A stretch of DNA of 64,000 nucleotides from the NCBI RefSeq assembly GCF_003918875.1, contig NW_025767356.1, positions 310,001-374,000 of the forward strand, in the 5' to 3' direction. This document shows positions 18,803 to 62,662 of the stretch, in pieces. The notes beneath the pieces are model-generated. The model ran no database searches, was not told where the DNA came from, and saw only the letters and a program-made list of their open reading frames with translations. Each line of letters starts with the position of its first letter. Within the stretch, counting starts at the first letter, position 1. The translations under genes were made by a program, and so were the position numbers. This DNA comes from Haliotis rubra. Taxonomy: Eukaryota.

Positions 18803-21800
18803 ATGGCGTCAGTGTCCATCTCCCGTCTAAAACCTGTATTGACAGTATTGATACTGATGATAGCGTGGCACACAGACAGTACTACCAGCAACAATACTAC
18901 AGGTGAGTGGACAGTAATGTTTTAGTCACGTGTATTGAGGCTCTCTCGCTGGGACACAAGTACAGGTGGAAGTGCAGGTGTTTTGGTGATATTATAATTA
19001 GATTTCCTGCTTAGATTTAGCAAGTTGATCTGAGTTTTATTGGAGTAATTGTAGATATCGATAACTGACACTGAATAAAAGAATTGATTAACCATGAATG
19101 TTTATAACAACCAGAATATCAGAAAAACTATTGATATCGCATCTACAAGCATCACTTTCTACAGTTCATAGTTATGGAAATTAACGTCAGTTGATAAGTT
19201 CGCTTGACCAGTAAAGCCCTAAAGGTTATAATACGAAAGAGTCAACGAGTTAGGTGTTAATGACAACAGATACTTGGTGATGAACTATGTACGAACCAGC
19301 ATCAACTGCTTCCTGATTCGACATTAAGTAACACATGCTTCTGTAGTATAGGACATAGATATTTCGGAATATAATTCTTGTTTCGTCAACACTATTACCT
19401 TGTAAATCATCCGTACGTCGTGTCAGCGGTAACGAGTACACAAAGTTATTTGGTTCACAACATGCGAAGGGCTGAACAAAAACGTATACCTCACTATTAA
19501 CAGTTATGCACTAGATACAGAATACTACAATAATACATCACATAGACGGTTTGGTAACATCCAAGTCTACAAAAGATGATCACAGAATACACGATAACAA
19601 GTCCAGATGTAATGGCGGTAAAACTTCACCCCAGCATATTCACTGTTTACAGTTATTTATTAGATATCAAATAAAACAAAACAAATACAATTTTGTGGAT
19701 TTATTTCAGAATCTTCATCAAATATTACAGAGTTCATGACGACAAGTTCAAATAGCAATAACGGTAAAACTGTCACCACACCATACTCACTATTTACAGT
19801 TATGTACTAGATAGGGGCGGTGGGGTAGCCTAGTGGTTAAAGCGTTGGCTCGTCACGCCGAAGACCCGGGTTCGATTCCCCACATGGGTACAATGTGAGA
19901 AGCCCATTTCTGGTGTCCATGATATTGCTGGAATATTGCTATAAGTGGCGTAAAACCCAAATCACTCACTCACTATGTACTAGATATCTAATATATATAC
20001 GAGTTCAATATCACTGTATATCATCCACATATTCACCGTGAAAGGTAATCTATTTGATAATAAAGCATCACATATCACAGTACAGCTTCAGCATATATTT
20101 GTAGCTGGTCATTAGATATCCAATAAATCAAGAGTCACCTATCACGACGTATCTCCCGCATATTCACTATTTGCAGTTGTGCATTAGATATTTAATAAAA
20201 CAGCACCTATCACGATGTATCTTCAGCATATTCACTATTTGCAGTTGTGCATTAGATATTTAATAAAACAGCACCTATCACGACGTATCTTCAGCATATT
20301 CACTATTTGCAGTTGGGCATTAGATATTTAATAAAAGTTATTGCATTAGATATTTAATGCAACAGCAGCCATCTGACGATGTCAGCACATATCACGCAGT
20401 TGTGCATTAGATATCAGCCATATCACGATGTATCTTCATATTCACTATTTGCAGTTGTGCATTAGATATCTAATAAAACAGCATATCACGACGTATCTTC
20501 AGCATATTCACTATTTGCAGTTGTGCATTAGATATTTAATAAAATAGCACATATCACGACGTATCTTCAGCATATTCACTATTTGCAGTTGTGCATTAGA
20601 TATCTAATAAAACAGCACCTATCACGACGTATCTTCAGCATATTCACTATTTGCAGTTGTGCATTAGATATCTAATAAAACAGCACCTATCACGACGTAT
20701 CTTCAGCATATTCACTATTTGCAGTTGTGCATTAGATAATATCTAATAAAACAACACATATCTGGCGGTATATCTTCAGCATTTTTACTACTTGCAAATG
20801 TGTATTATATATAATAGAAAACATCACATAAACAGTTTTAATATATTTCAGAATCTCCAACAAACTCCACGTCAAGTCTCAAGAGCAGCAATGGTCAACC
20901 TGTCACCATCAATTGTACGAAACTATTTTGTTATTTTCTTCATGTATATTACATTTGGTAATAACTTTCCTGTGTATTCTACTAGTAAACACTTCTACTT
21001 TGTGAATGCATTGAGCCTTGAACATGACTAATATCATGTGTTGGTATGATTTAATACAATATACGAGTTTTTTTGTGAGAATGAGTTGAGTGGTGAACAG
21101 CATCCAATCATGTTGACGATATCTTACCCAGCGTCCACTTCTAGATTGAATCTGGGAATTGTCTTGTGTGTGATCCTCGGTCTGTGAGCTCTGTTCCCAA
21201 GTTCATGTAATATCCAAACTGAATTATATTAATCAACAGATAACTCCCTACCGAAAAGACTGAATTATATAGTTTTCGCCGCTCAACAGATAACTTACTT
21301 CCTATCATGGGGGAATCAACCCGGGTCTTCGGCGTGACGAGCCAACGCTTTAACCACTGACGGACTCCCCTCCTTTGGTGTTCATGTCTAATATACGACT
21401 CTTTGGTGTTAGTTAGAATAGGACGGTGAGTAAAGCAGCCTGGGTCGAGCCCTGTGTTTTCGATGGGGTGTTCGCCATAACTACTAGTTAAAATCAAATG
21501 AGATAAGTACAAATGATCCGAGGAGTTTGACAACAGATACACAGATTTCACTGAAATTTACTTACACACTTTCTTTGTGTTCCCTACAGAGAAATACCCG
21601 ACATGGTGTGACGTATGTGCTGAAACTAAGTAAATGTCATTGTGTCTCTTCCTCAGGTTACATTACATATGAATCCTCCTGTGTTGCTCTCAATTGGTCG
21701 GCAGCAGAGACAGACTGCATCAACAAGAACGCCACTATATTCACTTTACTGGATTTAGCTACAACCATCGGCGGGAAGTATTACTGAAAGCCAGAGCTGA

Positions 21801-24800
21801 ACATACCACCATATGGATAGGGAACAATGGTAAACCTGAAACTTAACTTTCATTGATATAAAGCTGTTACAATGAACTACAGGTCTAGAATTCTGTTTCG
21901 TGCGCCACCAGGCTAGAACAGTAAAACTAGTTTGCTGTAAACTGACAGTGATCAACCATTGTTGAAAACGCAACATGTATATGGTTACAAACCACCTTTA
22001 TACATTCACCGAATAGTATGTTTAAACCAACAGGAACCACCTGCAAGACATCTGTCAATGACTCATTCCTCCCGGCAAACTGTAGTGACACCAACTATTA
22101 TGTCTGCAAAGGGAACACAAGTACCAGTAAGTATTTTGACAGAGAGAATCCTATCACAATTTACAGGAAATGATGCATTTTCTTGGCTTAGAATATACTC
22201 AGTTCGACATGCTGGTAGAGCAGCCTTCCAAGGGATGAAAGTGTTCTTAATACCATATACCCTGAACTCAGGTGTGATGAGGACAAGCATCAACATATTT
22301 ATAATTTACTGTCGGAGACGGTCACTGATATATGCACCTATGCATATGATGATAAACCATATTCAGTGTGGAAACACTTCCTATATATTGTACTAAACAA
22401 GCATGTACGACCTGCCATACAGCGCACGGGGAGCCATTCCTCCAGGCAAACTGTAGTCACACAATAAGAGGGAGCCTTATCACGAGGGTATACGGTCTCA
22501 TCTACCCTCTGTGTTGCCGTGCACCAGGGCGACCATGTTTGTTTGATTATTGGGTAAACTTGGGTAAACACAGCTATATGCAAACTACAGTTAGCAATTC
22601 ATATTCAAGATATTGTTCTCTCACGACAACGAAAACTGCTAACAATTAAAGCAAACAAGCAACAACAACAAAAACAGAGAAAAAGTCTCACAAAGGTCTG
22701 TACCGTGTGACCTCTGAAGCAGCTGATAGAAAACTGATTTTCCAAATGACTGTGTCTGGCTCATCCCACAGGAGGAAGTAATTTTCTAACAATAACAATG
22801 ACGTTCTGAACGTTACAATTCTAAGGAACAATCAGATATTTGGACTGTCGCCCGAATAGAGGGGTTCATTGTAGGATCGAAAACTCGCGAAATACGTCAT
22901 CCAGATCGAGCTCGGTTTCTCCCTGCTGGCGTGGTCCAGCAACAGGCAGTTGATTTTGTGTATGACATGCATGGGGGCACTTATTTTGTACATATATTTT
23001 TTCTCTGGGGGGCAATTAACATTGTACATGCTTCTCCATAAAAAGCATCATCACACACCCTAGCCATAAATTATGAACGGTCCCTAAACGTGATTGCATA
23101 TAAGATATACACCAAACTAACATATTTTGAGGACAGGGCCAATGGTAGATGCACCTATAAAAACATGTGAAGTATGTAACAGTACTCACTGACAACACGT
23201 TGAAAAACTGACTAAGTTCCTTCCGTTGGCTAACACAGCTCGAAGTGACGAGTTACAAAATTATGTAACTCATATGACATGCCTTCAGTGGATGCAGCAT
23301 GATAAATAGTATACGACAGAAGGTTCCTATTGTGTGTCATGTTTATCCTATATTGACAGGTCCTGATTGGTACGTACCATGTCGGGAGGGATCCACGGAC
23401 ACATCTACACAAGGTACAAGTGTTGTACACAGTTGTACTTCTCAAAATACAAATGGTGTTGTGTCCGCTATGTGGTATTCACATTGATAGGCGAAAACGA
23501 ATATGTTTTGACAGACAGACAGACAATTTATTTCGAGTATTCAAGGCCATGGCCCATATTACAAAAGGGTTTTAACAGGTGTATTCATGCTGGTCATATT
23601 ACAGGTATCGTGTCATCGGACGAGACAAGCAAACAAAAAGCTCTGGTAAAATAACAGAGATGCTAACTAAACTATCACACAATATTTCAGCATATGTACT
23701 GAAGATCTAATTATAATTTGTTGTATTTCTTATCCTAAAGGCTTTATATAAAAACCTTGCCAAACTTAATATCACAATCTTATCAGTGCTTGACATAATT
23801 CTAACAAAATTGTCTATAGAAGGGCTATTTCTTATGCTATTAAGAAGACATTCTCTTCTTTCGGCTTCATAACGCTGACAGATCATCAAGACATGAAATT
23901 CATCTTCAACAAGAAATATTTTTATTATGACAATATAAGCAAAATCTTTCACTAGCAGTTAAATTGCAATGCCTTCCTGTTTCAATTGCTAGCCTGAAAT
24001 TATTACACCTGAAATTACAGATAACAGTTCTTAAATGCTGTGGAATGACAATTGAAAGATAAGACTCAACATGTAGCATTGTTTTAAATTGACAATAAGT
24101 TTGGGCAATATGGACAAACAAAACAGGGCGATATTGACAAAAAAGACTTCTCGATTTGTGCTTCACATATTCAGTTTGGTAATGATGACAAATGCAAGGC
24201 ATGTAAGAATGTATCGACGATTCTCTTGCATCACAGTTTACCCACTTTTTCCTTGACAAGTGCAAATTTACCTTCCTGTAGATAATGGGATTTTGTAGTT
24301 TTACAGACAACGGTTGGTATACTTTTACCCGAGTAAGGGGTATCACAGTATGTTGTGCATGCATTTAGTTGCCTCCCTTGGACTTTCCAGGAACTTGTGG
24401 TCGTAGGTTTCTATTTCGGTAAGGGCACAAAGTTGCATATGAAAGTCATATATAGATATTATGGTCATGTATCTTGCGTCACTTATTGGTTCCCAGGGCC
24501 ATGATTGTGCTACTGTATGATAATCACAAAGACAGGAAGTTGGACGCACCTTAGTTGTTTGTGTGTTGTTCCAGGATCTTCAGGATCGACAGCACTGAAT
24601 TTGGCAACGACAACCCAAGGTTCAAACAGTAAAGGTACTATTGATGACTGTAAAACCATCTAATGTTACATTGTCGTTTGATCATCTTTTTCTTCAAAAT
24701 TGATTGTGTTATTAAGTGGGTAAAGTAATTAATATCACAAGATTAAGTTCGAGCTGCAAATGTTCAGTCACCCCTTTTCTATATAATGGTGTTTCACATT

Positions 24801-25477
24801 TAATTTATAAAATTTAACAGTGACCGTACATGAGCTCATACAAAATATCCATTTTCATATTTGTTCTTGGTTACAGTCATCGCTTCTGCGACCTGTGTTA
24901 TAGTGGCTCTCGTTGCTGTGTTCATCCTCTCAGGCATCTGCATCATTAAACGGTACGATTTATGTTTTTTGTAAATGAGTCAATACGTCTGTAAATATAA
25001 GTAGGTATCTATTAGATAAAAACAAAAATCTCTATTACCTTCACCCAACAACCTCTCATCTGTCCATTTGACCCTTCTCTGCATGCCCTGTTGTCTTCCT
25101 TCAGCAACAAGAAACCCATCAAGTATGCCGTGAGGGCTGAGAGCGCCATGTATCACAAACAACACCCGGATCCTGCTCAAGTAGAAGAACCAAAACTGGC
25201 AGATGTACAGATGGTTGTTAGTTCGACAGAAGCCGGCATTGGGAACGGTGGCATTGACGGAAGACCGGACGGAGAATATGACATTCTGTGTGGTGTAATG
25301 GGCAGTGAGGGGAAAGCTGCCACGTCGGATACCACGACCGTGTACAGTCATCTACGTGGAAATATCGCAGCAGATGATTCTAAGGAAGAAAACCATTATG
25401 ACACCGCAACGCTGCCACAATATGACAGGAGACCTGTAGACAAGATATATGACAGACTACATGTACCTGACCAGTAG
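18803..25477 (+). CDS. CTL-C: compact C-type-lectin-like type-I receptor with ITSM-like tail (~309 aa if a 1-nt deletion is corrected; otherwise a pseudogene)
   Basis: Exons: 18803-18902 (signal MASVSISRLKPVLTVLILMIAWHTDS); 21657-21829 (173 nt, versus 174 needed; AA at 21776-77 where CTL-B has AAA, giving TGA at 21785; corrected frame gives TIWIGNN); 22034-22126; 23360-23413; 24575-24634; 24877-24952 (TM); 25105-25477 (GEYDIL, TTVYSHL, ENHYD, YDRRPVDKIYD). Confidence 0.8.
19814..19973 (+). mobile_element. tRNA-derived SINE, family 1, with 13-bp TSD
   Basis: A/B boxes, (ACTC)n tail, flanked by TATGTACTAGATA on both sides. Confidence 0.9.
20090..20790. repeat. 68-bp minisatellite in CTL-C intron 1
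   Basis: Unit ATTTGCAGTTGTGCATTAGATATCTAATAAAACAGCACCTATCACGACGTATCTTCAGCATATTCACT, ~10 copies; diverged copies extend further on both sides. Confidence 0.9.
23510..24095 (-). mobile_element. LINE 3' fragment inserted in CTL-C intron 4
   Basis: Minus-strand FRCNNFRLAIETGRH...RFCLYC...VEDEFHVLMICQRY is a non-LTR ORF2 C-terminal Cys/His motif; (TGTC)n tail; absent from the aligned CTL-B intron. Confidence 0.85.
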
Positions 25478-30081: not shown

Positions 30082-30237
30082 AGTGAGTGAGTGAGTTGGG
30101 TTTGACGCCGCTTTTAGTAATATCACGGCGGGGGACACCAGAAATGGGCTTCACATATTGTACCCATGTGGGGATCAAACCCAGACCTTCGGCGTGACGA
30201 GCGAGCGCTTTAACCACTGGGCTACCCCCACCGCCCC
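30082..30237 (-). mobile_element. tRNA-derived SINE, family 1
   Basis: Reverse-complement match to the other copies. Confidence 0.85.
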
Positions 30238-30397: not shown

Positions 30398-32301
30398 ATG
30401 AACTCCACTTGGTCTGTCGACTGGTTGCTTGCTGTGAGCACGGCTAACACGGAGCTAGTCCGCACAGGTGAGACAAACAGTATGTGCGTATTGCTGAATA
30501 ACCAGTGTAATACTTTAGGACCTTTTAAATGTGTACTGTCCTTCAGCGGCTGTAGGGAGTGAACACATATGACAAAAGGCAATTTAATTGAGATTAAATT
30601 ATTTGAATCCTTTAAAGAAGTTAAAACAGGCACAGCAGTGGTAATACAACGCTACAACCGTCTGACGTTCAGGGGTAACCTAGGTCCAACGCTGTACTGA
30701 ATGCTGAGCCATGGATGTATAGTAATTCTATCCTTCAAAGAGGCAAGTCTAGATAAGCGGATAGTACAGATGCCAGTCTGTTAATTATACTTTTTCATAA
30801 ATTTTCATTTAAACTTATTGAGACTTGGGCAAGTCTAGTTCAGGGGTATCAGAATAGAATACAGTAGACCCGGCGATCTATATGTTCTACATAAAACCTG
30901 CCATTCACGCAGTGATAGGATTGTCTTGATAACAGAAAGCACGGACTGACTGTATCGCGACCACTGTGTTACCAACAACAGGTAAATGTACTTGACACGG
31001 CGGAGCTCCTGGCAGTAATAATTCACTCGCAGAGTAAGGACGATTAAGCTATTTGGATTTGAAAAAAAGTCAGCGATAGATTTAAAGAAAACATATTTTT
31101 GAAACTGTTCTTTCAATTTGAAGCCAACATTCGATCACATATGTATGGCTGTATTACCTTATATTACCCGTTTGTCAGGATTTCCATCAGTCCCTTTACT
31201 GAAACTTACCACACTTTCTACATTATGTTTACAAAAAAACATGAACTACTCTCTATAGCGTACTTCATACTTGATAATTTGCAGGATACGTAGCTTATCA
31301 ACTGATCTTTGTTCGTAGCCTCTTACGTAGCGCTGGCAGGGGTTATCTCCCTTCTCCTATGCCTGCTCCTGCTCGCCAGTATCAACACGTGCATCACCTG
31401 CAGGTACACGTTCGGTTATTACCTGCTTCTTACTTTGTAATAGTTTTCTGAGGTTGTTGTAGAGTGTGTGTCCCAGTAGACACATGTTGTACAGAGTTTC
31501 ATGGGATTGCTGACATACGAACTAGTGAGGACTGAAACATAGTCTTATCTTAAATGTTTTTAAAAGTGTACATATCTACATCCATAACACTAAACGATTT
31601 AAATAACTCTGTCTGTACATATCTATACCCTTTGTCTGCCTCTTGTTGAACTTTTTTGTAATATACACTTGTAACTATGTGGAGAGGGCTTATTTAAGGT
31701 TGGATCACTTGTGCCCAATCCGTTTCTTAATTGAATAAAATATGTTTCAATCAATCAATCTGACTATAACGTCTTGGCATGTCTCAGTGTAATTAATGGT
31801 AGCTTATAATGTATGTTGTACCCGACGGTTAAACCTGGAGTATTTTCAAATAATTTCTTCTATTAATATTTTCATCTCATTCAAAATGTAAATTATAACT
31901 GATTATGTATGTACAGTCCGGAAGAATGTTCACATTATTGAAATATGTCTCCTTATCGTTTAAGAAATCCAGGCAGAACAGAAACACCTCCATGCCTTGA
32001 CTCCATAGCAGAATTCAGCAGAGTGGCGGATCTATGTTCACCATATCATACGACTCACTTACATCCAGCATGTCACAGTTCTTCCAAACCTGGACGGAAA
32101 TCGTCTGGAAGTGATGGGTACGCCAAACCCTTCCACCCTGGACGAGGGGTCAGCTTGAGCGAACACTATGTGTCTGTAGACATGGAGCGTAATGACGGGC
32201 ACAGTCCTGTACTGACAACAGGTGCGAGTCATCGAGGCAGCACATGGTACGATACGGACATTGTTGTACGAGGGAATCCTCAAAGCTCGTGCACGACATA
32301 A
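30398..32301 (+). CDS. TMA-1: small type-III transmembrane adaptor-like protein (~163 aa)
   Basis: Exons: 30398-30467 (MNSTWSVDWLLAVSTANTELVRT, donor GTGAGA); 31319-31403 (TM YVALAGVISLLLCLLLLASI followed by CITC); 31965-32301 (tail DGYAKP, EHYVSV, WYDT; AAG acceptor). Phases are consistent; extra small exons cannot be excluded. Confidence 0.6.
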
Positions 32302-32414
32302 CGTGGACCCTACCCGAACAACGTACGTGACACCTGAGGTCATAAACCCATTGGATTCCCTGGTTCTATTGAACTTTTAGTGATCAGACACTGACATTCT
32401 TCATGTATCATTTG

Positions 32415-32539
32415 GTGCGGTGGGGTAGCCCTGTGGTTAAAGCATTCACTCGTCACGCCAATGGTCCAGGTTCGACTCCCCACATGGGTATAATGTGTGA
32501 AGACCAAGTGGCGTAAAACTCAAATCACTCACTCACTCA
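32415..32539 (+). mobile_element. Internally deleted SINE, family 1
   Basis: Head with A/B boxes joined directly to the tail. Confidence 0.8.
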
Positions 32540-33228
32540 TTCCCCCTGTATCAATTCTGATTTTCCAGAGCACATACTGATGAACTGAAAATGAATATTG
32601 TAAACATATACAGCTTACGTCGGGTATCCGGAATAAAACGTGAAAATTGCATAACCTTTCTTTTATTGTATACATTCCAACTGGTGAGCTGGAACACTAC
32701 AAATCTACTTCAGATATACATCTACTGATAGCGAAAGATGTGTTGAGAAAAATATGCCACACTCATTGTCCTGAACATACCTTCTTGTACGTGTCTTACT
32801 TTCACAATCTTTTCTTTTAAATCCAGCGTAATATGTTTCGTCAGATAACTCAGACGGATTATTTTCTGGGTGTGATTATTTATGTTAAATATCGTCAGTT
32901 GTCGAGTACTGGGCAATGCTTCAACCTATCAAACAGCGACTTGTTTCAACGTCTTCTGTCGATGTTTTTGTTAAATTTCAAAGGAGTTTATTAGTCATGT
33001 ACTATTTCCTTATTATTCATGTTGAATTACGTTTCGATTTCCAGTCAGTCATTTGACGGGTCCATGACCATGGAAACATTTAATATATTAAGTCAAAGAG
33101 GACGTGTTCATGTAAACAGTTTTTATTAAATCAGGAAACAGTTACCGCACTTTGTTTTACAGCCTCCAAAGCAATGACGTATTGACTGTGTTTCTGGTTT
33201 AAATAATTATATTATACTACAGTAAAAG

Positions 33229-34479
33229 ATGTCGGACATAAGTATGTATGTAGGAACATCTGCCGTGTTGTTGGTCTGCATGGCTCTGATCATCGTTATC
33301 CTGCTACGAAGGTGGGTCCAACTCGACGTAATATGCCCTTGTGCTTATTTTACCGCTTCGTTCACCCGCAATGCTTGTTACGGATCCAATTAATGGAACA
33401 CGTGAGACAGCGGACAAATGTATTGTTTGTGTATATCTAACTCTGTTAAAATATCTGCACAGAGCTTTACTCATTCTTTCACAAGATGGCAGCCATTAGT
33501 CATATTAATCAAACACAGTTAAAATCACTTACTTCCTTGTCCAGCTGTGACGCAGAGCCCCGGTCCGCATCTTCTTCCTCGTGTACATATGGTTGAGCCA
33601 GAAGAGTAGTTTCAGTGAGCAGGGATTTCCGTTATTAGATATATTGTCGTAATATTAATACTCGTTCACGATCACACTCTAGACTGAACCTATCCCTTTA
33701 TCCGTTACCAACATAGACATCTGTCTATATTTCATGTCAGTGGTTCCAAGGGGATGTTAAGTCTATTCCTCAATACATATCTTAATATAATACCACATTA
33801 GTGCGCCTTGTGGCTGCAAGCGTTGTATGATCCCCAGGAAGTTGAGAATGATCATACGAAGTGCCGTTAAGACTGACATCCTATGATCGAAGGAAAAACA
33901 AAGCGCCTGTGAGCAGCCTATATAAATAGATTATAATTATAAAATAATAAACAAGAATCCCATACCATAGGCACTTTTCTTCACATGTAAACATAAGCGA
34001 CAAAACCCTTCGACATCCATAACAAATCCGATGTGATGCAATATATTATTACAACTTTCGGGAAATCTGAGGCAGAAGATGAGGTGGCAGGGTCCTGGCA
34101 AAATACACCCTGCCCAAACAATTGCTCTCCGGTTGACATTCCACTTTAAAAACGTGTATATTTCACTTTGTCATCAGCATTTGATTATCACGTTTGATGA
34201 TACTTCAGATACCACCGACTCCTACAAGCCACACTGCTGACAGAACTGTCCCGGTTCCTGTATCAAGACAGTGGACCTAGCAATGTTCAAACAGCCCAGT
34301 CAAGCCAGGTCAAGTCTGGAGATGCAAAACGGTCGCACTCCTTCAACCGTGGAATGTGCACTGGCTGCCTGACAAGGGGAAACTACAGTCGGATTGATGT
34401 AGACAATCTGTCAGACACATCTCATGATGACGTAATTATGACTTACAACGAATATGGTTGCAGCTCTGTGACAGTGTAA
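33229..34479 (+). CDS. TMA-2: small type-III transmembrane protein (~117 aa)
   Basis: Exon 33229-33311 MSDISMYVGTSAVLLVCMALIIVILLRR (in-frame TAA just upstream of the ATG; donor AG|GTGGGT, phase 2) joins 34209-34479, a stop-free 89-codon frame (YHRLL...GNYSRI...TYNEYGCSSVTV*). AATAAA at 34635. Missed by the ORF track. Confidence 0.6.
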
Positions 34480-39600: not shown

Positions 39601-42600
39601 ATGTCAATGAGTGAGTGAATGGGTGGGTGAGTGGGTGAAGGAGTGGCCGTAAGGATAGATAAAAGTGTCCAAACCCTGTCGGTTACGACCACACCCAAGT
39701 AGCTGAGTCAGATTCAGAACATTCTGAACACCTGGATCTAGATTCCTATCTCACTACTCAAACCTTGGTGATTTAAATGTGCCATTGTACAGTATGTCCC
39801 ATATCTTCTAAATAATGTTATAAATGTTGTTTTATTCGCGGCTTGATTGTGGTAATATGGAATTGAATGGAATGACCTTTTGTGTTGGACCAAGATCCGG
39901 TGCTCTGTACCAATTCGTTTGATTTGAGGCTGCTCGATCAACGACTCCATGGTACCAACTGCCTAATATTATTGTAATTTCCATGTCGGGTGCTCGGAAT
40001 TAAGGACAACGAAATAACTTTCAGTCATTGTGCCACCATAACCCTTCTCAGAAATCATCACTATGTACACTATGTAAGCGGCACAAACATCAAGCAGGAA
40101 CCGCCACGCCTCACCATAGGTTACCTTTACGAGATGAAAAGCAGGAAGTTAGTGTACAAACCTTTTCTGGACAACCCAACCGTACTTGAGAGTATAGGGT
40201 CTGTGTTGACAAGACACGTGAATGTGCCAAAATCATTTTTATTGACATTTGTTATCTTCAGTGTCCAGTTTCTCCTGTGTCCCCTGGAACTGACTGTGTA
40301 CCGTTTCCTGAGACTCCGTGACCCGAATGTGACCACACGATTGCTGGGGTCAAGCCACAGAACCTGCAAAATACGTCTCCTATACAGAACATGTCATAGA
40401 ATGTGTCAGAGTGGTTGCCGTTCAGGAAATATAATTATACTAGAAACTGACGTTTGTGAGTGAGTGAGTGAATGAGTTTAGTTTTACGCCGCACTCTGCA
40501 ATATTCCAGCTATATGGCGGCGGTCCGTATATAGTCGAGTCTGGACCAGACGATCCAGTGATCAACATCATGAGCATGGATCTGCCCATTTGGGAACCGA
40601 TGACATGTGTCAACCAAGTCAGCGAGCCTGACCACCCGATCCCGTTAGTCGCCTCTTACGACAAGCATGGGTTACTAAAGGTTCATTCTAACCCGACCCT
40701 TCACGGGTCCTGACGTTTGTCAATCGATGAAGTGACTGAGTTGGTATTACGTCGTTTTCAGTAACAGTCAAACATCTGAGGGGTTAGTACATGTAATGCA
40801 TAATACATTGGATAGGTATTGCACTATTTTTGAATGCTAACAGGCATGAGGGACGAACGTTGTAACGCCACGCTAAACAAGATGGAACTGAAACCAATAC
40901 CTTATTACCACTGAATAAAAGCTGACCAGACAAATTCATTACATGTGTAACACACGATTTTTGAATTGTATGTTTTTTTTGTGTCAAATGAGCTTTAATA
41001 GTCGTTGTCCTGGTAACAATATCCTGGTCTTTAATAACCACTTATTAAACGTTTGTTTTCCTGAGCAGATTCGTCTACGGATCTATCTCATCACGAACCG
41101 GAGATAAGGTGATTATATTTAGCCAGTCTCTACAGCCATTCTATCAAACAATATATGAACAGGCCATCCAGTGGTGATTTTCCCATACTGTGTTAACCTT
41201 GTACAAGTCAGTTGCATGTGCTAGGCGAATCACGAACATCACCTCAACAGTGTAACCTTTGCCCGACTATACTGAAGAGGCGGAAATATGACAAGCGTAA
41301 TTGACCATGGACGACGAACATGACCGCCTGTTGAAATCACGACATTGCTTGATAGGAAACTGTCAATTAACGATTACTATACTATGCCTCGGCCTAGTAT
41401 CTAATAATGACAAAATAGTTAATAATGGTGTTATTTGTCTTCCTATTAAGTGTTTTTTATGTGTATTTTAAAATATTGCTTGAAGCTTCAATAGCTTTCA
41501 GTAGCTTTCAATAGCTGCAATAGCTTCTTACCATTCATAGTGATGCACAGCCAGAACCAAATATGCTACACTCAACAGTATTCTGTTCTAACCTTATACT
41601 TATGCTTTCGTTGGACAATACAGGGAAGTTCGACATCATCGCCTATAGAAGCCTTTACTGTCTTTTCTGAAGTTCGAATGAGTGTGAAATGTTTATCTGC
41701 AAGTAGAAAAACATAAGTAACATTTTACGGATATATGGTATAGAACTATCAATTAGAGCGAGTGAGTGAGTGATTATGGTTTTACGTCGCTTTTAGCAAT
41801 ATTACAGCAATATCGCAGGTATCACCAGAAATGGGCTTCACACATGGTACCCATGTGGGGAATTGAACCCGGGTCTTCAGCGTGACGAGCGAATGCTTTC
41901 ACTATTAGACTACCCCACCGCAACTATTGATAAAATCGAAATAATTGTTAAAACGTACGATGTACACGAGTATCTCATTTACAGTGACATGCGAGGTTAC
42001 ATTAAAAAATAAATGCGTAAATGTAGCCTATAAACACAAGCGAAGACAATCCTCAAGTATGCTGTGCACTTCGGGAACAGATCTAGAGGGGTAATGGAGT
42101 TCTTTGGGGATGAGGGTAGATTGGTGAAGAATAGAGCAATAACGGTTTATTCATTACTTTCTCTTCTAAAGCATATTTGCACCTTACACGAAACAAGTAA
42201 GATAGACCACCAAACAGTTAAGTACATGGCACATTGACAGCATCATGTTCACCTTTTCTGACCAGCGTGAACTTTGTCGAGTTCACCACCGTCCTGTTCA
42301 GCAACCAATAACAGGTGTAGTACCCCGCGTCCGTCACCCTGGTAGCATCAATGATGAGACTGGACCAGCCTTGCTTTGTGTCTTCCTCGATCTGGTACTT
42401 GTCGGGGTGAGAAATCACCCTACCGCTGACGGCGATGGGAATCTGTAACCCCGTCTTTCTCCACATTACCTGGTGAATTACCGCACCATTCATGCTTACT
42501 ATGTTGACATCGACTGTCAAGCTTGCAGCAGATATTATAAATTATCATTATCATGAACATGTCATTATAACAATATGCTTATTTCCTACAGTGATACAAT

Positions 42601-45380: not shown

Positions 45381-48300
45381 ATGTCGGGCGGCTGTTTGTT
45401 CATAGTTATCTTTCTACTAGCAGACATCCAATCCACATATCACGAACTAGGTAAGTTGTACTCAATACTACGTATATATAAAGAGGTTAATGTTACATGG
45501 ATCGTTGGAATTGTAAGTATCCTTACAAGTTTGTATACTACTTCTGCTTCCGGGCAGAATGAGAGGATTAGCCAGCACTGTTTTGATTGACGTGAGCTTA
45601 GAATATTATAGCATGAATTTCATAATTAGGAAAGCATGGGCGTGCCCTGAAGTAGCACAACATATACAGAAATGTTTAAATGCAAGCTTCACACTGAAAC
45701 GAAATATCGATTTGTGCACATAATGTTGCATATATAGAGGGCTTATATTTTACAAAAGACGGTTGAGGAACATGCGGGTAAAATTGTATTTAGATGAAAC
45801 TTATTTCGCTTGAAACCATTAATAATGACTATCTTGGGGTACTATCTTGCCTCTCAAAGAAGTTATCTTGGGGGTAAACTGTACGGCCAGCCAGCTCCGG
45901 TTGTAGAGAAATAACCGTTTCCATTTGATGATGACGTCACCGTTCCCTGCTAAGCATTTTCACCCAAACTATATCTGCCGTTGAACCCATTCTGTGGATA
46001 CCCGTTTTACTACATGATGAATGATATTTACAACATTGCAGTTTCAACAACTCAGATCACATTCGACAGGGGAGACAACGTCACCTTGACATGCAATATC
46101 CCGTGTAACAGGAAGGTGTGTATAAATAGCCAGGGATGTTTTACCATTGTATACGTCACACAAGTTGTTTATTTTACTAATCTGCAAACTGTTGCCTGTT
46201 TCACGACTAATTTCATCTGTTAAGCTGTAAGTAACTGTACATTGTTGTCGTCAGCTTTCAGACTGAGCGAGGGTGGGTGGGGTAGCCTAGTGGTTAAAGC
46301 GTTGGCTCGTCACGTCGAAGACCCGGGTTCGAATCCCCACATGAGTACAATGTGTGAAGCCCATTTCTGGTGTCCCCTGCCGTGATGTAGCTGGAATATT
46401 GCTAAAAGCGGCGTAAAACCAAACTCAGTCAGTCAGTCAGTCAGACTGAGCGTATCAACATCGTGTCTTGCGATGTGGACACGTGACTCTCAACAACTGA
46501 ACGTGTCGTGTTAAAATAGTTCATTTAAACAAAAGATAATGAAAGAGTCATGTATGATCAAAATGTTTGATAGTTTTTAGTAACGCAATAATATCACAAG
46601 ATGTCAAAATGTCGGTTAACAATAAAGAGTTATTTCGAATGAGCTTACTTTCATCTTGATGCGGCAACAACCTCTCTCGAGGAAATGAGTTCAGGTTTTC
46701 TTTTATCGGGCATACGGGTATTGTGTAGAACACAGAATGAAACTGTAATCTAATCAGAAAAGTAAAATTTTGAACTCTGGTCATATAAATATTTGTACTT
46801 ATTCAACAAACATTTTTGTTGCAAAACAAATCTGTTTCCAAACCGTTTGTCTTCACTTGCAAGCAGCGAAATCTGTAACATTCTACACAACAGTCGATCA
46901 CCTGAGTGTCTGGTTTGTGTACAGGCCGCGTGACAGGAGGACATTGTTCAGGCAAATTGTGCAGGTGGCAGGAGCTACCGGTCAGGGCAAAACATTCTTA
47001 CCCTTTACGGGAACACCTGGTGTCATCACTGATTTTCAGTGATCCGTTTTTCTCATTCTTACGGTATTTCGCTCTTTACACCAAATGGAAGCTGTATCTG
47101 ATGATAGTCAAAACCCTGGCTATCCCTTTGCACTGACCTCGTGTATTTCCTGGACAAAAAATTGTTTGAGATTGATCATGCCTGACTCGATTGAATATCA
47201 TGTATGTTATTGTATCAACTGTCCCTCCGCCGCAGATCGGAGACACTACAGACCTACGTGTAGGTTATACACATCTGACTCTTACTTTTACCCCTTGGAT
47301 TTATTCACTATTATACTAATCATGTTTGGCATGAATTGACTTCGAAGCATTAATGCTGATATATATAACATAATTTCTCACCAATGAAGGTATTGTGGAA
47401 GCGATGGTACAACCCGGTCCCAATAGCTGTCGGCAAGAGGCTGTTCGTGAATACTCAGAAATATGCATTACAAGAGAACCACGGTGATTTTCAACTGACC
47501 GTCATATCTGCACGTCGTCCAGATGCAGGGATCTATGACTGTGTCTACAAGAACGCTAGCAGGAAGCTTGTACAGCGGTTTGAATTAACGCTCAAAGGTG
47601 ACTACGATTTGTTGTTGAATGGTGTCTTGGTCAACCTTCTTTGTCAACATGCTCTTCAATGCATATCGTCCTGTCTCTCTTGTGCAATCTAAAGCTCCTG
47701 AAGTAAAGCACTGGATTGTGTGAACCATACTCGATTATTCACAGATCGACGATTGCGATGCCATGCAGACAACTGTTTGTTTCTATTAATAGCAGGTGGT
47801 AGGGATTCTTCAAGTAGAGAAAATAAACAATTGCACAGCTTTCGTAGAGTAAAGTATGTACGCCATATTATCAAGCGTCCCTTTATTTTGCCCAGAAAGA
47901 TTGTAAACCAGCACGTTGAAGTTCACATGCTGGTCGCTGCATTCAGGAACGGTATGAGCTCAACACAGTTTATCTATCGTACTCGTTACAGGTGAAGACG
48001 CTTCTAATGAAAGCATATCAGGCATATCTGTTGCCGCAGCGTGTGGCAGAACAGCCAAACTACACTGTACCGTCAAAGTTCGCAAGCCATCCAAGGTAGG
48101 TCCTCCCTGGACAAGTACTTACTAACTATTCCCCCAACAGCATCTGGCATTATGACATTGTCAACATTTGTTTTACAGGTTATATGGATGGACAACCGGG
48201 GACTGCTTGTATCTGTTGGCAAAACAAGCTTCAGATCTAGATACAGGAGCTCTTATGACAACATAAGCAATTCCTGGCAGTTGAGGATCAGGCCCGTGAC

Positions 48301-50193
48301 CAAACACGACTTTGGACATTTTACCTGCATGGTAAAGGGTGATACCGTCATGGCTGTTGATGTGACCTTGAAAAGAAAAGGTACGTTGAATCCGTTTGGA
48401 CAAGATCTTTTAATATAATTTAAAAGTAAATAAAAACAGTGCCACACGATGGTGTTTTCTTGTTTGCATTATATAAACCGTAATTCACCGACAAACACAT
48501 GTCAATTTAACCGTCTATGTGATGTGGTGCTTATGACATATACCTGAGTTAAGGGTAGTAAATTATTTGGAAATTAAGTTAGCCTCATTTCGTATTTCCA
48601 GGAAACTCGACCTTGTGCCTCTCAAGCCCTGGGGATCACACAGAAAACAGGACTTCTCCAGCCAATGCAACACAGGCCAGTGATGAAGGTGCTATTATAT
48701 CTCATTGACATACCTCATGACTTGATAAAGTTGGTACAAGCATGAACGTGTACGGTTAATTAAATGTATGTACATTTAAATTTAAATTTAAATTTACATT
48801 TAAACACTAAATTGTGTTATGTTAACAGATACAACTCTTTCCTGGGGGGACCTTCACGCCACAGAGAAATACGACGACACAAGACAACCAGGACCTGCTG
48901 AAACTTCTCTACTTCTTCAACTCCGAACAGGTGATATATTAAATACATATTGTCACACTCTGGAGATAATCAGTGTTTAGCTTTGTCGTTTTAGGGGATT
49001 TGTTTGTGCGTTTGTTGTTCCATAATACAGGTCGCCACTAAATAGATATAACCTGGACAAACAATCAAGTGGTTGATATTATGATGAACGATCCACGGCT
49101 CCGGTCTACGAAGTAGCAGATCTGCTAAATCCGACGATAAGTATAAGAACCTGTCCTCTATTCCAACATGTTCACGTAATCCAGACATATTTATCATAGA
49201 GCTGACACAAGCATTTTGTGTCATGGATCAACGTGTCGGAAGCTAAAACTTTCCGTCGCCACTGATATTATACAAGTGATGTACAAGGTAGTAGGTAGAA
49301 CATAATATGTGTAAATGTTTAGTTGTTATATCATTGTTACACGTGGATAGTCAGTAGGTGCTTCTCATATTAATATATATATAAACGGAAATCGTATTAG
49401 TAAGCAAATCATATATATGTATATTATGGAACGTTACAACATATGTGTTAAATCTACAATAACTTGTATTTTCCCAGGTCTGGTCATTCTCGGTGTTGGG
49501 TATGCGGTGTTGTGTCAGCAGTGATCTGTGTCGTCGCTCTCTGTACTGTCAGAAGGTGTGTTGTTATTAGCATGCACTCTCTCTAACTGTCATCACTGTG
49601 TCTGAACACATTCATGAATGTCTGTCTTTATCAACAAATGGCTCATTCGCAGTTAATTTACTGGATTGCGTAAATCATATTTTGAACAAAATTTCACAAC
49701 AAAGAACGGGACAGCTAAATGCTGGAGGTCGATGTTTTACGCTGAAGGACGTAGTTTCATGTTATCTGTGCCAATTCGTCAAAATCGCTCTTATGTTGAC
49801 GAGAAGTACAATTTGATAATGGTCCGTGTCTCATGCTCCTGTGACAGAATCACCCACCTGACCAGCACTGCCCGGGGACCGGAGACCGAGAGGGAGCCCC
49901 CTCGGACTGAGGAAACATCACTGTCGAGCTCGAGGTGGCACTACAGCTTGTCTACTCCGTATGAGTCGAGATCCAGCGTGGCGCCACCTGCAACCAGGAT
50001 CAGGAACTATTGCCGTAGCAGTAGTATGGGTGCTACGACCGGCGTCCATCCCAGCGGGTGCATGTTCTCCTCCTACCCCTCCTCCGCCCCTCACCCCCTG
50101 CTTGTCCCGGGGGGCCAACACGCACCTCACGTCTCTCCACAACAGTCTGATGACGACGAAGAAGAAGAAGTGTCGGATGCAATTGCCGTGTAG
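45381..50193 (+). CDS. Ig-2: type-I receptor with two Ig domains (~423 aa if a 1-nt deletion in the TM exon is corrected)
   Basis: Exons: 45381-45450 (signal); 46042-46115 (GDNVTLTC); 47390-47597 (VLWKR...DAGIYDC); 47992-48095 (TAKLHC); 48179-48380 (VIWMD...DFGHFTC); 48602-48688; 48829-48930; 49478-49555 (TM, frameshift at GGG 49498-49500); 49848-50193 (Ser/Pro-rich tail with acidic end). Exon sizes 70/104/202 are identical to Ig-1. Confidence 0.82.
46270..46445 (+). mobile_element. tRNA-derived SINE, family 1, with TSD
   Basis: A/B boxes, (AGTC)n tail, CAGACTGAGCG on both flanks. Confidence 0.9.
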
Positions 50194-51559: not shown

Positions 51560-51720
51560 GTGAGTGAATTTAGTTTTATGCCGTTTATGACAATATTCCA
51601 ACAATGTCACGTTGGGGGGACAGGAAATGGGCTTCACGTATTGTACCCATGTGGGGAATCGAACCCGGGCCTTTGGGGGCACGAGCGAACGCTTTATCCA
51701 CTAGGCAACCACACTGACCC
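51560..51720 (-). mobile_element. Diverged SINE, family 1
   Basis: Reverse-complement similarity (ATTGTACCCATGTGGGGAATCGAACCCGGG). Confidence 0.75.
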
Positions 51721-62397: not shown

Positions 62398-62662
62398 NNN
62401 NNNNNNNNNNNNNNNNNNNNNNNNNNNNNNNNNNNNNNNNNNNNNNNNNNNNNNNNNNNNNNNNNNNNNNNNNNNNNNNNNNNNNNNNNNNNNNNNNNNN
62501 NNNNNNNNNNNNNNNNNNNNNNNNNNNNNNNNNNNNNNNNNNNNNNNNNNNNNNNNNNNNNNNNNNNNNNNNNNNNNNNNNNNNNNNNNNNNNNNNNNNN
62601 NNNNNNNNNNNNNNNNNNNNNNNNNNNNNNNNNNNNNNNNNNNNNNNNNNNNNNNNNNNNNN
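62398..62662. other. Assembly gap (N run) flanked by (CA)n and (CATC)n
   Basis: Run of N. Confidence 0.99.

What the first reader, a model, noticed from the sequence alone, without database searches (positions are those of the whole stretch)
30398..32301. LAT/PAG-like transmembrane adaptor candidate
Seen: no obvious signal peptide; a ~25-aa ectodomain starting MNST (sequon); a TM followed by CITC; a Ser/Pro-rich tail with YAKP, YVSV and YDTD. Established: vertebrate raft adaptors (LAT, LAT2/NTAL, PAG, LIME) have this layout with a juxtamembrane CxxC palmitoylation motif. Inference: a convergent or deeply diverged adaptor encoded among the receptors it may serve.
Basis: partly seen in the sequence, partly recalled or inferred. 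Interest (0 to 1): 0.7.

Follow-up and report, generated by a model that had tools for sequence, protein, structure and literature searches.

The report
Abalone small membrane protein, adaptor-like layout
This is a real, spliced and conserved abalone gene for a small one-pass membrane protein that is built like the vertebrate immune "raft adaptors" (LAT, PAG, LIME) but shows no detectable kinship with them, so the adaptor role is a reasonable, untested hypothesis.

Summary
Isoform X1 uses a donor 12 nt further on (167 aa).

Evidence that the gene is real:
- Orthologs with the same exon structure and gene neighbours occur in H. asinina, H. cracherodii and H. rufescens.
- dN/dS is 0.35-0.52.
- Exons 2 and 3 are better conserved than the introns.
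- Two RNA-like runs of a sister species hold contigs that break at the exon-3 acceptor.

No upstream signal or ectodomain exon was seen.

The layout is:
- a poorly conserved stub of about 23 aa with no signal-peptide core;
- a highly conserved membrane helix;
- an invariant C-x-x-C-R;
- a tail of about 110 aa predicted disordered, with three invariant Tyr-centred islands (SPYH, GYAKPFHPGRGVSLS, STWYDTD).

YVSV and the MNST sequon are not conserved.

A Pfam scan, a PDB profile search and a profile search of 1.84 billion proteins found no relatives outside Haliotis. Language-model features place it nearest LIME1, SCIMP, GAPT and PAG, but only as a whole layout; the tail alone gives no hit.

Verdict: a lineage-restricted small membrane protein with a raft-adaptor-like layout. 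The adaptor function is plausible and unproven. Homology to LAT/PAG is not supported.

The parts
30398..30467 (+). Exon 1 coding part (isoform X2): start codon and the 23-aa N-terminal extracellular stub MNSTWSVDWLLAVSTANTELVRT, ending in phase 1
   Evidence: Sequence. Exact reconstruction of P0001 with GT-AG introns. No in-frame upstream ATG, and an in-frame stop 28 codons upstream. No signal-peptide core. Weakly conserved: 61-84% nt identity, about the same as the 300 nt upstream.
30468..30479 (+). Extension of exon 1 used by isoform X1 (alternative donor A|GTATGT at 30479/30480), which adds GETN and gives 167 aa
   Evidence: P0004 (XP_046546983.1) sequence compared with the DNA.
31319..31403 (+). 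Exon 2: membrane helix (about residues 25-47, 31321-31389) and the juxtamembrane CITC (residues 48-51, 31390-31401), ending in phase 2
   Evidence: KD19 maximum 2.83. AF2 helix 5-52, with block-mean pLDDT 85 and 92 over residues 21-40. dN/dS 0.16-0.37. C38, C48, C51 and R52 are invariant in four species. 11 codon columns show only synonymous change.
31965..32301 (+). Exon 3: cytoplasmic tail of about 111 aa and the TAA stop
   Evidence: dN/dS 0.36-0.45, with bootstrap intervals below 1. AF2 pLDDT <50 for residues 56-163. RNA-like contigs of runs X16 and X9 start to match at 31963, while genomic DNA of the same species matches from 31905.
32035..32064 (+). Conserved tail island 1: C-S-P-Y79-H-(T/M)-T-H-L-H
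   Evidence: Invariant columns in A1. Synonymous-only variation within it.
32107..32181 (+). Conserved tail island 2: G-S-x-G-Y104-A-K-P-F-H-P-G-R-G-V-S-L-S-x-H-(Y120/N)-V-x-V-D
   Evidence: Residues 103-117 are invariant in four species. 10 codon columns show only synonymous change. Y120 is Asn in H. asinina.
32239..32259 (+). Conserved tail island 3: S-T-W-Y147-D-T-D
   Evidence: Invariant columns and synonymous variation.
32302..32655 (+). Probable 3' UTR; it contains a dispersed repeat at about 32413-32518 and an AATAAA at 32632-32637
   Evidence: The RNA-like contig of X9 runs to 32591 and that of X16 to 32443. AATAAA on the + strand. Repeat family D10. The end point is inferred.

Best explanation
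LOC124257048 is a genuine, expressed, single-copy abalone gene.

Shown:
- Three coding exons encode a 163/167-aa protein.
- The protein has one strongly hydrophobic, strongly conserved helix.
- There is no signal peptide.
- A C-x-x-C-R motif is invariant at the inner end of the helix.
- The tail is about 110 aa, is predicted disordered, and evolves under purifying selection. Its constraint is concentrated in three short islands, each centred on an invariant tyrosine.

Inferred:
- The helix acts as a signal anchor, with the short N-terminus outside and the tail in the cytoplasm.
- The two juxtamembrane cysteines are S-palmitoylated.
- The tail is a docking strip. Its Tyr residues (Y79, Y104, Y147, and Y120 in most species), and possibly Ser115 in the RGVS context, are phosphorylated and recruit cytoplasmic SH2-type or other partners to the membrane.

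On this reading it works like a vertebrate palmitoylated transmembrane adaptor (LAT, NTAL, PAG, LIME, SCIMP) but arose independently. It is not a detectable member of any of those families.

My confidence that it is a real gene with this layout is about 0.9. The 0.4 given here is for the adaptor mechanism.
For: Gene model:
- It is identical to RefSeq XP_046546984.1/XP_046546983.1.
- Orthologs have identical splice phases and GT-AG sites in H. asinina, H. cracherodii and H. rufescens.
- Neighbours are the same in all four species: a gene of about 328 aa upstream, a small gene downstream, and an Ig gene on the opposite strand.

Selection:
- dN/dS is 0.35-0.52 overall, 0.16-0.37 for the membrane exon and 0.36-0.45 for the tail. 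Bootstrap upper limits are below 1 for the tail and for the whole gene.
- Exons 2 and 3 are 74-89% identical, against 46-76% for the introns.
- Only synonymous changes occur inside the invariant amino-acid islands.

Transcription and splicing:
- Runs X16 and X9 cover the exon parts and the repeats, plus two small contigs inside intron 1 in X9. They have zero depth over 32744-33728, where the whole-genome runs X13 and X4 are even.
- Their contigs (599 and 728 nt) match from 31963 only, leaving 103 and 85 unmatched 5' letters.
- Genomic DNA of the same species (X4) matches back to 31905.
- The depth of 0.73 in the exon-1 bin equals 20 nt of the X16 contig.

Layout:
- No signal-peptide core.
- AF2 gives a helix over residues 5-52 and a tail with pLDDT <50.
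- C48, C51 and R52 are invariant.

Likeness to adaptors:
- Atlas feature search of two orthologs that are 61% identical gives LIME1 0.94/0.93 and SCIMP 0.91/0.91 for both. For P0003 alone it also gives GAPT 0.87 and PAG 0.87.
[quoted passage not shown] PAG has two palmitoyl sites just after its membrane helix (PMC3492796).
Against: - No sequence or profile similarity to any adaptor family.
- The feature-search scores are in a range that shuffled proteins reach 4-10% of the time, and the shared-feature counts (164-165) are below the 170 typical of true family members.
- The tail alone gives no hit, so the likeness is carried by the generic 'short stub, membrane helix, disordered tail' layout. 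Non-adaptors such as SMIM33, TMIE, opalin, FAM163 and stannin share that layout.
- Only 3 tyrosines are invariant, and none sits in a YxN, YxxM, ITAM or ITIM context.
- The invariant island around Y104 is 15 residues long, longer than an SH2 motif needs.
- The tail is charge-neutral (D+E 11, K+R 11).
- Juxtamembrane cysteines also occur in the neighbouring receptors, so they are not specific.
- Palmitoylation, phosphorylation, partners and tissue of expression are all untested.
- The sister species carries P78S and G100E at positions that are otherwise invariant.
Confidence: 0.4

Rival explanations
1. It is a real small single-pass membrane protein, but not a phosphotyrosine adaptor. The conserved tail islands would bind something else: an accessory or regulatory subunit of a channel, transporter or receptor, a sorting or trafficking tag, or a Cys/His metal-binding clasp in CSPYHTTHLH. 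The CxxC would be acylated or structural, without any raft-scaffold role.
For: - The nearest feature-space neighbours also include non-adaptor small membrane proteins: SMIM33, TMIE, opalin, FAM163, TMEM210 and stannin.
- The conserved islands are longer than SH2 motifs and rich in His, Gly and Pro.
- There are no canonical SH2 docking motifs, and Y120 is lost in H. asinina.
- The tail is not acidic.
Against: - Every conserved island is centred on a tyrosine.
- The layout plus CxxC matches palmitoylated adaptors best among named clusters, for two orthologs queried separately.
- The gene lies in a receptor cluster next to a second small membrane protein that carries a YxN motif.
Confidence: 0.4
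2. The membrane and tail exons are, or recently were, alternative 3' exons of the upstream receptor gene (which ends at 25477), or a beheaded receptor remnant. In that case the MNST exon is not the main first exon.
For: - Exon 1 ends in phase 1, like a leader exon of immunoglobulin-superfamily genes (that comparison is recalled, not tested), so exon 2 could accept other phase-1 exons.
- Exon 1 is no better conserved than its upstream flank.
- H. rufescens has an alternative first exon.
- The upstream genes are described in an earlier scan note as paired receptors with different tails (not tested here).
Against: - Gene models in four species all start at the same conserved ATG (MN...ELVRT).
- The exon-1 bin depth in X16 fits a contig that joins exon 1 to exon 2 (inferred).
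- The H. rufescens alternative isoform also gives only a 17-aa stub.
- There is a 4.9-kb gap after the upstream stop codon.
- No paralogous tail or membrane exon exists elsewhere in the window.
- Purifying selection excludes a decaying remnant.
Confidence: 0.07
3. It is a true but extremely diverged ortholog of a vertebrate adaptor family (LAT, LAT2, PAG, LIME1 or SCIMP), inherited from the bilaterian ancestor.
For: The layout and CxxC are shared, and LIME1 and SCIMP are the top named feature hits.
Against: - No Pfam hit at E<=10.
- No hit beyond Haliotis in 1.84 billion representatives with a four-sequence profile.
- The tail alone gives no feature hit.
- The protein already falls to about 61% identity within one genus, so the signal could not be traced even if homology existed. 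The claim is therefore unsupported rather than disproved.
Confidence: 0.05
4. It is not a gene: a chance chain of open frames turned into a model by automated annotation.
For: - There are no characterised homologs or domains.
- The RNA status of runs X16 and X9 is a guess by the tool.
Against: - The frame is intact, splice sites are identical and dN/dS is well below 1 in four species at dS up to 0.9.
- Exons are conserved more than introns.
- Contigs break at the acceptor in runs that lack intergenic coverage.
- The sister species' 15-nt length difference over 31963-32443 is a multiple of three. Its position, in the coding part or the 3' UTR, was not shown.
Confidence: 0.03

Closest known systems
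LAT / LAT2 (NTAL, LAB): vertebrate palmitoylated transmembrane adaptors
   Same: - No signal peptide and a very short extracellular N-terminus.
- One membrane helix followed directly by Cys-X-X-Cys, which is the palmitoylation site in LAT and LAB (PMC7655920).
- A disordered cytoplasmic tail whose conserved points are tyrosines.
   Different: - No sequence or profile similarity.
- No YxN (Grb2-type) or YLxV (PLC-gamma-type) motifs.
- Only 3-4 tail tyrosines, against about 9-10 in LAT (from memory).
- The tail is charge-neutral rather than acidic (the LAT comparison is from memory).
- The stub is longer (about 23 aa).
- The family is restricted to Haliotis as far as searches can see.
LIME1 and SCIMP (Lck-interacting and SLP/Csk-interacting membrane adaptors)
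   Same: - They are the nearest named clusters in protein-language-model feature space for two orthologs (0.94/0.93 and 0.91/0.91).
- They are small type III proteins with juxtamembrane palmitoylated cysteines and a few tail tyrosines (SCIMP: Cys-X-Cys, PMC7655920).
   Different: - The feature scores are in the range of occasional chance hits, and the shared-feature count is below that of true members.
- The tail alone gives no hit.
- No Pfam PF15332 or PF15050 match.
- YAKP and YVSV only loosely resemble the Csk-SH2 sites (Y-[S/A]-S-V type, recalled from memory).
PAG1/Cbp (Csk-binding raft adaptor)
   Same: - One N-terminal membrane helix with two palmitoyl sites just after it (PMC3492796).
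- A short extracellular stub of comparable length (about 16 aa in PAG, from memory).
- A PAG cluster appears at 0.87 for the ortholog P0003.
   Different: - The PAG tail is about 380 aa with 10 tyrosines and a PDZ-binding end (from memory). This tail is about 110 aa with a non-conserved C-terminus.
- No PF15347 match.
Generic small type III membrane proteins (SMIM33, opalin, TMIE, FAM163, stannin)
   Same: They have the same overall layout and similar feature-space scores (0.87-0.90).
   Different: There is no sequence similarity to these either. They are not known as phosphotyrosine scaffolds, which is why the layout alone cannot decide the function.

Membership tests
LAT/LAT2/PAG/LIME1/SCIMP as homologous families (Pfam PF15234, PF15703, PF15347, PF15332, PF15050) | Significant sequence or profile similarity to the family model | tested here: not met
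   hmmscan of all four orthologs against Pfam-A at E<=10 gave no adaptor family. A profile search of 1.84 billion representatives found only the protein itself plus one spurious repeat ORF. The word-index search found nothing outside Haliotis.
Palmitoylated transmembrane adaptor proteins (TRAPs) as a functional class | Type III topology: no cleavable signal peptide, a short extracellular N-terminus and a single membrane helix | tested here: met
   Hydropathy: N-terminal 9-residue maximum 1.3-1.5, against a membrane 19-residue window of 2.8-2.9. AF2 gives a single helix over residues 5-52. No upstream in-frame ATG. The N-out orientation is inferred only from R52/R56 after the helix.
Palmitoylated transmembrane adaptor proteins (TRAPs) as a functional class | Juxtamembrane cytoplasmic CxxC (or CxC) motif, conserved | tested here: met
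   C48 and C51 (CITC, CITC, CLIC, CLIC) followed by R52 are invariant in four species.
Palmitoylated transmembrane adaptor proteins (TRAPs) as a functional class | The cysteines are actually S-palmitoylated and direct membrane-domain localisation | not testable with these tools
   Needs acyl-biotin exchange or acyl-RAC with Cys-to-Ser mutants.
Palmitoylated transmembrane adaptor proteins (TRAPs) as a functional class | Disordered cytoplasmic tail without enzymatic or folded domains | tested here: met
   AF2 pLDDT <50 for residues 56-163. No Pfam domain. No PDB relative.
Palmitoylated transmembrane adaptor proteins (TRAPs) as a functional class | Multiple conserved tyrosines in recognised SH2-docking contexts (YxN, YxxM, YxxL/V, Y[SA]xV) | tested here: inconclusive
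   Three tail tyrosines are invariant (YHTT/YHMT, YAKP, YDTD). A fourth (YVSV/YVTV) is lost in H. asinina. None is YxN or YxxM, and there is no ITAM or ITIM.
Palmitoylated transmembrane adaptor proteins (TRAPs) as a functional class | Inducible Tyr phosphorylation and recruitment of SH2 proteins | not testable with these tools
   Needs phosphorylation and pull-down experiments.
DAP12/DAP10/FcR-gamma type signalling chains (considered) | Charged residue inside the membrane helix for pairing with a receptor, and an ITAM or YxxM in a short tail | tested here: not met
   The helix SYVALAGVISLLLCLLLLASINT has no D, E, K or R. There is no ITAM or YxxM. The neighbouring receptors' helices also lack charges.

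The most novel reading that the evidence does not exclude
Molluscs evolved their own palmitoylated transmembrane adaptor independently of vertebrates. On this reading LOC124257048 is a haemocyte raft scaffold that couples the surrounding Ig and lectin-like receptors to Src/Csk/SH2 signalling. The neighbouring 117-aa protein, with its invariant C-terminal TYNEYGCxSVTV (YxN plus a PDZ-type end), may work with it. That would make this locus an invertebrate counterpart of a receptor-plus-adaptor immune gene complex.
Probability: 0.25. Interest if true: 0.65.

Novelty: new variant of a known kind. Interest (0 to 1): 0.35.

Why it matters
As far as I know, transmembrane adaptors of the LAT/PAG/LIME type are described only in vertebrates (from memory; my literature searches found no invertebrate example, and one Csk review only notes that Csk and Src kinases are conserved down to choanoflagellates).

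If an abalone protein with the same layout were shown to be palmitoylated and Tyr-phosphorylated, two things would follow. First, the 'lipid-anchored disordered docking strip' solution arose more than once. Second, there would be a handle on how molluscan Ig and lectin-like receptors with Tyr-motif tails signal.

As it stands, the firm result is modest. A gene already annotated as 'uncharacterized' is shown to be real, spliced, conserved within Haliotis, restricted to that lineage as far as searches can see, and adaptor-like in layout only.

Tried and rejected
1. Acceptor at ccag|G (31967/31968) for exon 3. It is out of frame and runs into a stop. The working acceptor is ttaag|A at 31965.
2. 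P0006 (a Logan protein, 156 aa) as transcript evidence. It is only a genomic read-through ORF of intron 2 plus exon 3.
3. Runs X16-X23 as RAD tags, because all share 0.35 of the words. Laying them showed exon-plus-repeat coverage typical of RNA assemblies, so this idea was dropped.
4. Paralogy with the tails or membrane exons of the neighbouring receptors, or with the adjacent small gene. tblastn found nothing below E about 0.1, and hhalign gave probability 0.4%.
5. P0007 (431 aa, E 2.4e-4). It is a tandem-repeat ORF repeating PFHPGLCVSLSR. I treat it as a low-complexity coincidence with PFHPGRGVSLSE.
6. A hidden signal peptide in the hydrophobic in-frame stretch just 5' of the ATG (IGICFFILIKSSA). 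It has no ATG, there is a stop 17-29 codons upstream in all species, and T-rich DNA translates as hydrophobic residues.
7. Structure search. It was not run because the model's tail has pLDDT <50, so matches would be meaningless. The Atlas's own structural hits for P0003 (TM 0.33-0.40, bacterial histidine kinases) are noise from one long helix.
8. Pfam, PDB profile and Atlas tail-only searches gave no result.
9. The scan's earlier notes hold nothing on adaptors.
10. The splice joints themselves could not be read, because the joint table was filled by repeat-derived joints and only one read-laying run is allowed.
Full report
**Source and setting**

The window is Haliotis rubra (blacklip abalone) contig QXJH01000649.1; window position equals contig position minus 300000. 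It is animal DNA with about 39-41% G+C, many tandem repeats and tRNA-derived SINE copies. One SINE copy lies at 30116-30237, just upstream of the finding.

Pfam confirms immunoglobulin-domain exons at 42218-42517 (-), 47384-47689 (+) and 48041-48415 (+). Several long open frames are Tyr-rich receptor tails. Earlier notes of this scan describe lectin-like and Ig receptor genes on both sides. I did not re-test the lectin-like reading.

**Observation**

- The ATG is at 30398, followed by MNSTWSVDWLLAVSTANTELVRT, and a donor G|GTGAGA after 30467.
- An acceptor tag|CC at 31319 opens an 85-nt exon that encodes ASYVALAGVISLLLCLLLLASINTCITC, with a donor CAG|GTAC after 31403.
- An acceptor ttaag|A at 31965 opens the tail exon, which ends with TAA at 32299-32301.

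Only this combination of GT-AG sites reproduces the database protein. The nearby ccag acceptor is out of frame.

A word-index protein search with the tail exon returned a 100% match. Isoform X1 (167 aa) uses a donor 12 nt further on and inserts GETN. Neither isoform has any ectodomain exon.

**Is it a real gene?**

Orthologs exist in H. asinina (175 aa, 75% identical), H. cracherodii (181 aa, 61%) and H. rufescens (181 aa, 61%).

In all four genomes the gene has the same three coding exons, the same splice phases (1, then 2) and canonical splice sites. It also has the same neighbours: a gene of about 309-329 aa upstream on the same strand, a small gene downstream, and a 424-491-aa Ig gene on the opposite strand.

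Selection:

| Measure | Value |
|---|---|
| dS, pairwise Nei-Gojobori (three more distant lineages) | 0.27-0.89 |
| dN/dS, whole gene | 0.35-0.52 |
| dN/dS, membrane/CxxC exon | 0.16-0.37 |
| dN/dS, tail | 0.36-0.45 |
| dN/dS, N-terminal stub | 0.3-1.6, wide intervals |

Bootstrap 95% intervals are below 1 for the whole gene and for the tail.

Against H. cracherodii, exons 2 and 3 are 80% and 75% identical, while the introns are 46-57% and the 3' flank 45%. Exon 1 (63%) is no better than its upstream flank (61%).

Inside the invariant amino-acid islands many codons differ only synonymously: 11 of 29 columns in the membrane exon and 10 of 27 around Y104. The constraint therefore acts on the protein, not on the DNA.

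**Transcription**

No run is on record as RNA, but runs X16 and X9 of a sister species behave as RNA assemblies. They cover the exon parts and the repeats, plus two small contigs in X9 inside intron 1 (see "Other observations"). They have zero depth over 32744-33728, where the whole-genome runs X13 and X4 have an even 9-20x.

The key contigs are:
- X16: 599 nt, matching the window only from its letter 104, at 31963-32443.
- X9: 728 nt, matching only from its letter 86, at 31963-32591.

Genomic DNA of the same species (X4) matches continuously back to 31905. So the break at 31963 is a splice, not divergence. It falls two bases before the acceptor, and those two bases (AG) are also the last two of exon 2.

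The unmatched 5' parts fit exon 2 (85 nt) plus about 20 nt of exon 1. The X16 depth of 0.73 in the bin that holds exon 1 equals 20 x 7.23 / 197. The X9 depth in the bin that holds the start of exon 2 (3.45) fits the expected 3.34. This last step is inferred from coordinates and depths. The joint table was swamped by repeat joints, and I could not lay the reads a second time.

An AATAAA at 32632 fits a 3' UTR of about 350 nt.

The sister species differs from H. rubra in exon 3 by 5 non-synonymous and 4 synonymous changes. It also has 15 more letters than H. rubra over 31963-32443 (a multiple of three; where the difference lies was not shown). Three of the five replacements restore the residue seen in the other species.

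**Anatomy of the protein**

- **N-terminus.** The 23 residues have no signal-peptide-like core: the best 9-residue hydropathy is 1.3-1.5, against 2.8-2.9 for the 19-residue membrane window. No in-frame ATG lies upstream, and a stop follows within 17-29 codons in all four species. H. rufescens has an alternative mini first exon (MLETK) that can join an acceptor inside exon 1 and give a 173-aa form, again with a short stub.
- **Fold.** AlphaFold2 on the four-sequence alignment gives one helix (residues 5-52) and a tail with pLDDT <50 from residue 56 to the end.
- **Invariant residues** include most of the helix (ALAGVI.LLLCLLLLA), N46, C48, C51 and R52. They also include three tail islands: C76-S-P-Y79-H-x-T-H-L-H85, G103-Y104-A-K-P-F-H-P-G-R-G-V-S-L-S117 (continuing as H119, V121, V123, D124), and S144-T-W-Y147-D-T-D150.
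- **Not conserved.** Y120 (YVSV/YVTV) is Asn in H. asinina. The N2-S-T sequon is missing there too. The C-terminus varies, and H. rubra has an early stop beyond which homology continues.
- **Composition.** The tail is 15% Ser and 9% Pro, has 7% His, and is charge-neutral.

**Relatives**

None was found beyond Haliotis.
- The word-index search with the tail and with the four-sequence profile found only the three Haliotis clusters.
- An exhaustive HMMER profile search of 1.84 billion representatives found the protein itself and one repeat-derived ORF (PFHPGLCVSLSR repeated eight times, E 2.4e-4), which I take as coincidence.
- Pfam at E<=10 and a PDB profile search gave nothing meaningful.
- No paralog exists in the window. 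The adjacent small gene is unrelated (hhalign probability 0.4%).

Because identity is already down to about 61% within one genus, orthologs in other gastropod families would probably be undetectable. Absence of hits therefore means 'lineage-restricted as far as sequence can see'. It does not prove a recent origin.

**How it most likely works**

Shown: a conserved signal-anchor-type helix, an invariant C-x-x-C-R at its cytoplasmic end, and a disordered tail under purifying selection that is focused on three Tyr-centred islands.

Established knowledge:
- Juxtamembrane Cys-X-X-Cys is the palmitoylation site of LAT and LAB/NTAL.
- SCIMP has a Cys-X-Cys site (PMC7655920).
- PAG/Cbp has two palmitoyl sites just after its N-terminal helix (PMC3492796).

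Inference: the abalone protein is S-acylated at C48/C51, and its tail is a docking strip regulated by phosphorylation of Y79, Y104 and Y147 (and Y120 where present).

Some independent but weak support comes from protein-language-model features. Nearest named clusters:

| Query | LIME1 | SCIMP | SMIM33 | GAPT | PAG |
|---|---|---|---|---|---|
| P0001 | 0.94 | 0.91 | 0.89 | - | - |
| P0003 (61% identical ortholog) | 0.93 | 0.91 | 0.90 | 0.87 | 0.87 |

The tool's own calibration says such scores arise by chance in 4-10% of shuffled proteins. The shared-feature counts (164-165) are below those typical of true family members. The tail alone gives no hit. Non-adaptor small membrane proteins score nearly as high. 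I therefore read this as 'same layout class', not as homology.

Points against the adaptor reading:
- None of the conserved tyrosines sits in a YxN, YxxM, ITAM or ITIM context.
- There are only three or four of them.
- The Y104 island is longer than an SH2 site needs.
- The tail is not acidic.

I put the adaptor mechanism at about 0.4. An unrelated role as a small membrane protein is also about 0.4. The remaining rivals (alternative or beheaded receptor exons, true deep homolog, non-gene) together are about 0.15.

**Link to the neighbouring receptors**

This is untested. The helix has no charged residue, and neither do the membrane helices of the flanking receptor genes, so DAP12-style pairing is not indicated. 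Conserved gene order across four abalones is expected for such close genomes and carries little weight.

**Other observations**

- The next gene (33229-33311 plus 34209-34479, 117 aa) is a second small type III membrane protein. It has a 7-aa stub, a membrane helix, then RR-Y/F-HR, and an invariant C-terminus TYNEYGCxSVTV (a YxN motif plus a PDZ-type end). It is conserved in all four species, including an unannotated H. asinina copy, and is covered by the RNA-like runs.
- X9 also has small contigs inside intron 1 (30874-31205).

The N run near 62400-62650 was left untouched.

**Verdict**

- The gene model is already in RefSeq as an uncharacterised protein.
- What is new here is the evidence that it is real, conserved and lineage-restricted, and that its architecture matches palmitoylated transmembrane adaptors.
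- Interest is moderate to low (0.35). If the adaptor role were shown, it would be a convergent invertebrate counterpart of that class.

Noticed in passing
window 33229-33311 and 34209-34479 (+): A second small type III membrane protein gene lies right next door (117 aa; annotated in H. rubra, 152 aa in H. cracherodii and H. rufescens, unannotated but present in H. asinina at L003:14157-14390). It has a 7-aa stub, a membrane helix and RR(Y/F)HR. Its C-terminus TYNEYGCxSVTV is invariant (a YxN Grb2-type motif plus a class-I PDZ-like end). A GMCTGCL motif is lost in H. asinina. It is not homologous to the candidate. RNA-like contigs cover its exon 2.
   Followed up: partly
window 30116-30237 (also 2780-2902, 21310-21377, 41803-41925, 51599-51721): There are copies of a tRNA-derived SINE, often followed or preceded by a (TGAG/TGAC)n plus 'TTTACGCCGC...AGCAATATTCCAGC' module. 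One copy sits 160 nt upstream of the candidate's start codon. It attracts huge contig depth in all runs.
   Followed up: no
window 30874-31205 (intron 1 of the candidate): The RNA-like run X9 has two small low-depth contigs inside intron 1 (30874-31053 and 31038-31205). They could be pre-mRNA, an unannotated exon or an antisense transcript. The region is not conserved between species.
   Followed up: no
window 31553-31758 (intron 2): A dispersed repeat sits inside intron 2, with very high depth in the whole-genome runs. In the more distant species (X13) the contig spans 31551-31944 with only 181 letters, so part of this stretch is an insertion in H. rubra or a deletion there.
   Followed up: no
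window 32299-32331: The H. rubra stop codon is lineage-specific. Orthologs read on for 12-18 more residues, and tblastn homology continues past the stop to 32331.
   Followed up: partly
L005:10001-10015 and 10339 (H. rufescens): An alternative first coding exon (MLETK, donor AAG|GTGAGT) can join an acceptor inside exon 1 and give a 173-aa isoform with a 17-aa stub. This explains why the annotated gene range starts 299 nt before the main ATG.
   Followed up: partly
window 6771-9238 versus 21865-24674: A segmental duplication with a period of about 15 kb (89-96% identical blocks) covers the upstream receptor genes. Their tail exons (10180-10467 and 25091-25477) differ, in line with the earlier 'paired receptor' note.
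   Followed up: no
P0007 (431-aa database protein, no locus): A repeat-derived ORF that repeats QPFHPGLCVSLSR eight times matches the candidate's most conserved island KPFHPGRGVSLSE (E 2.4e-4). I take it as coincidence; its origin is unknown.
   Followed up: no
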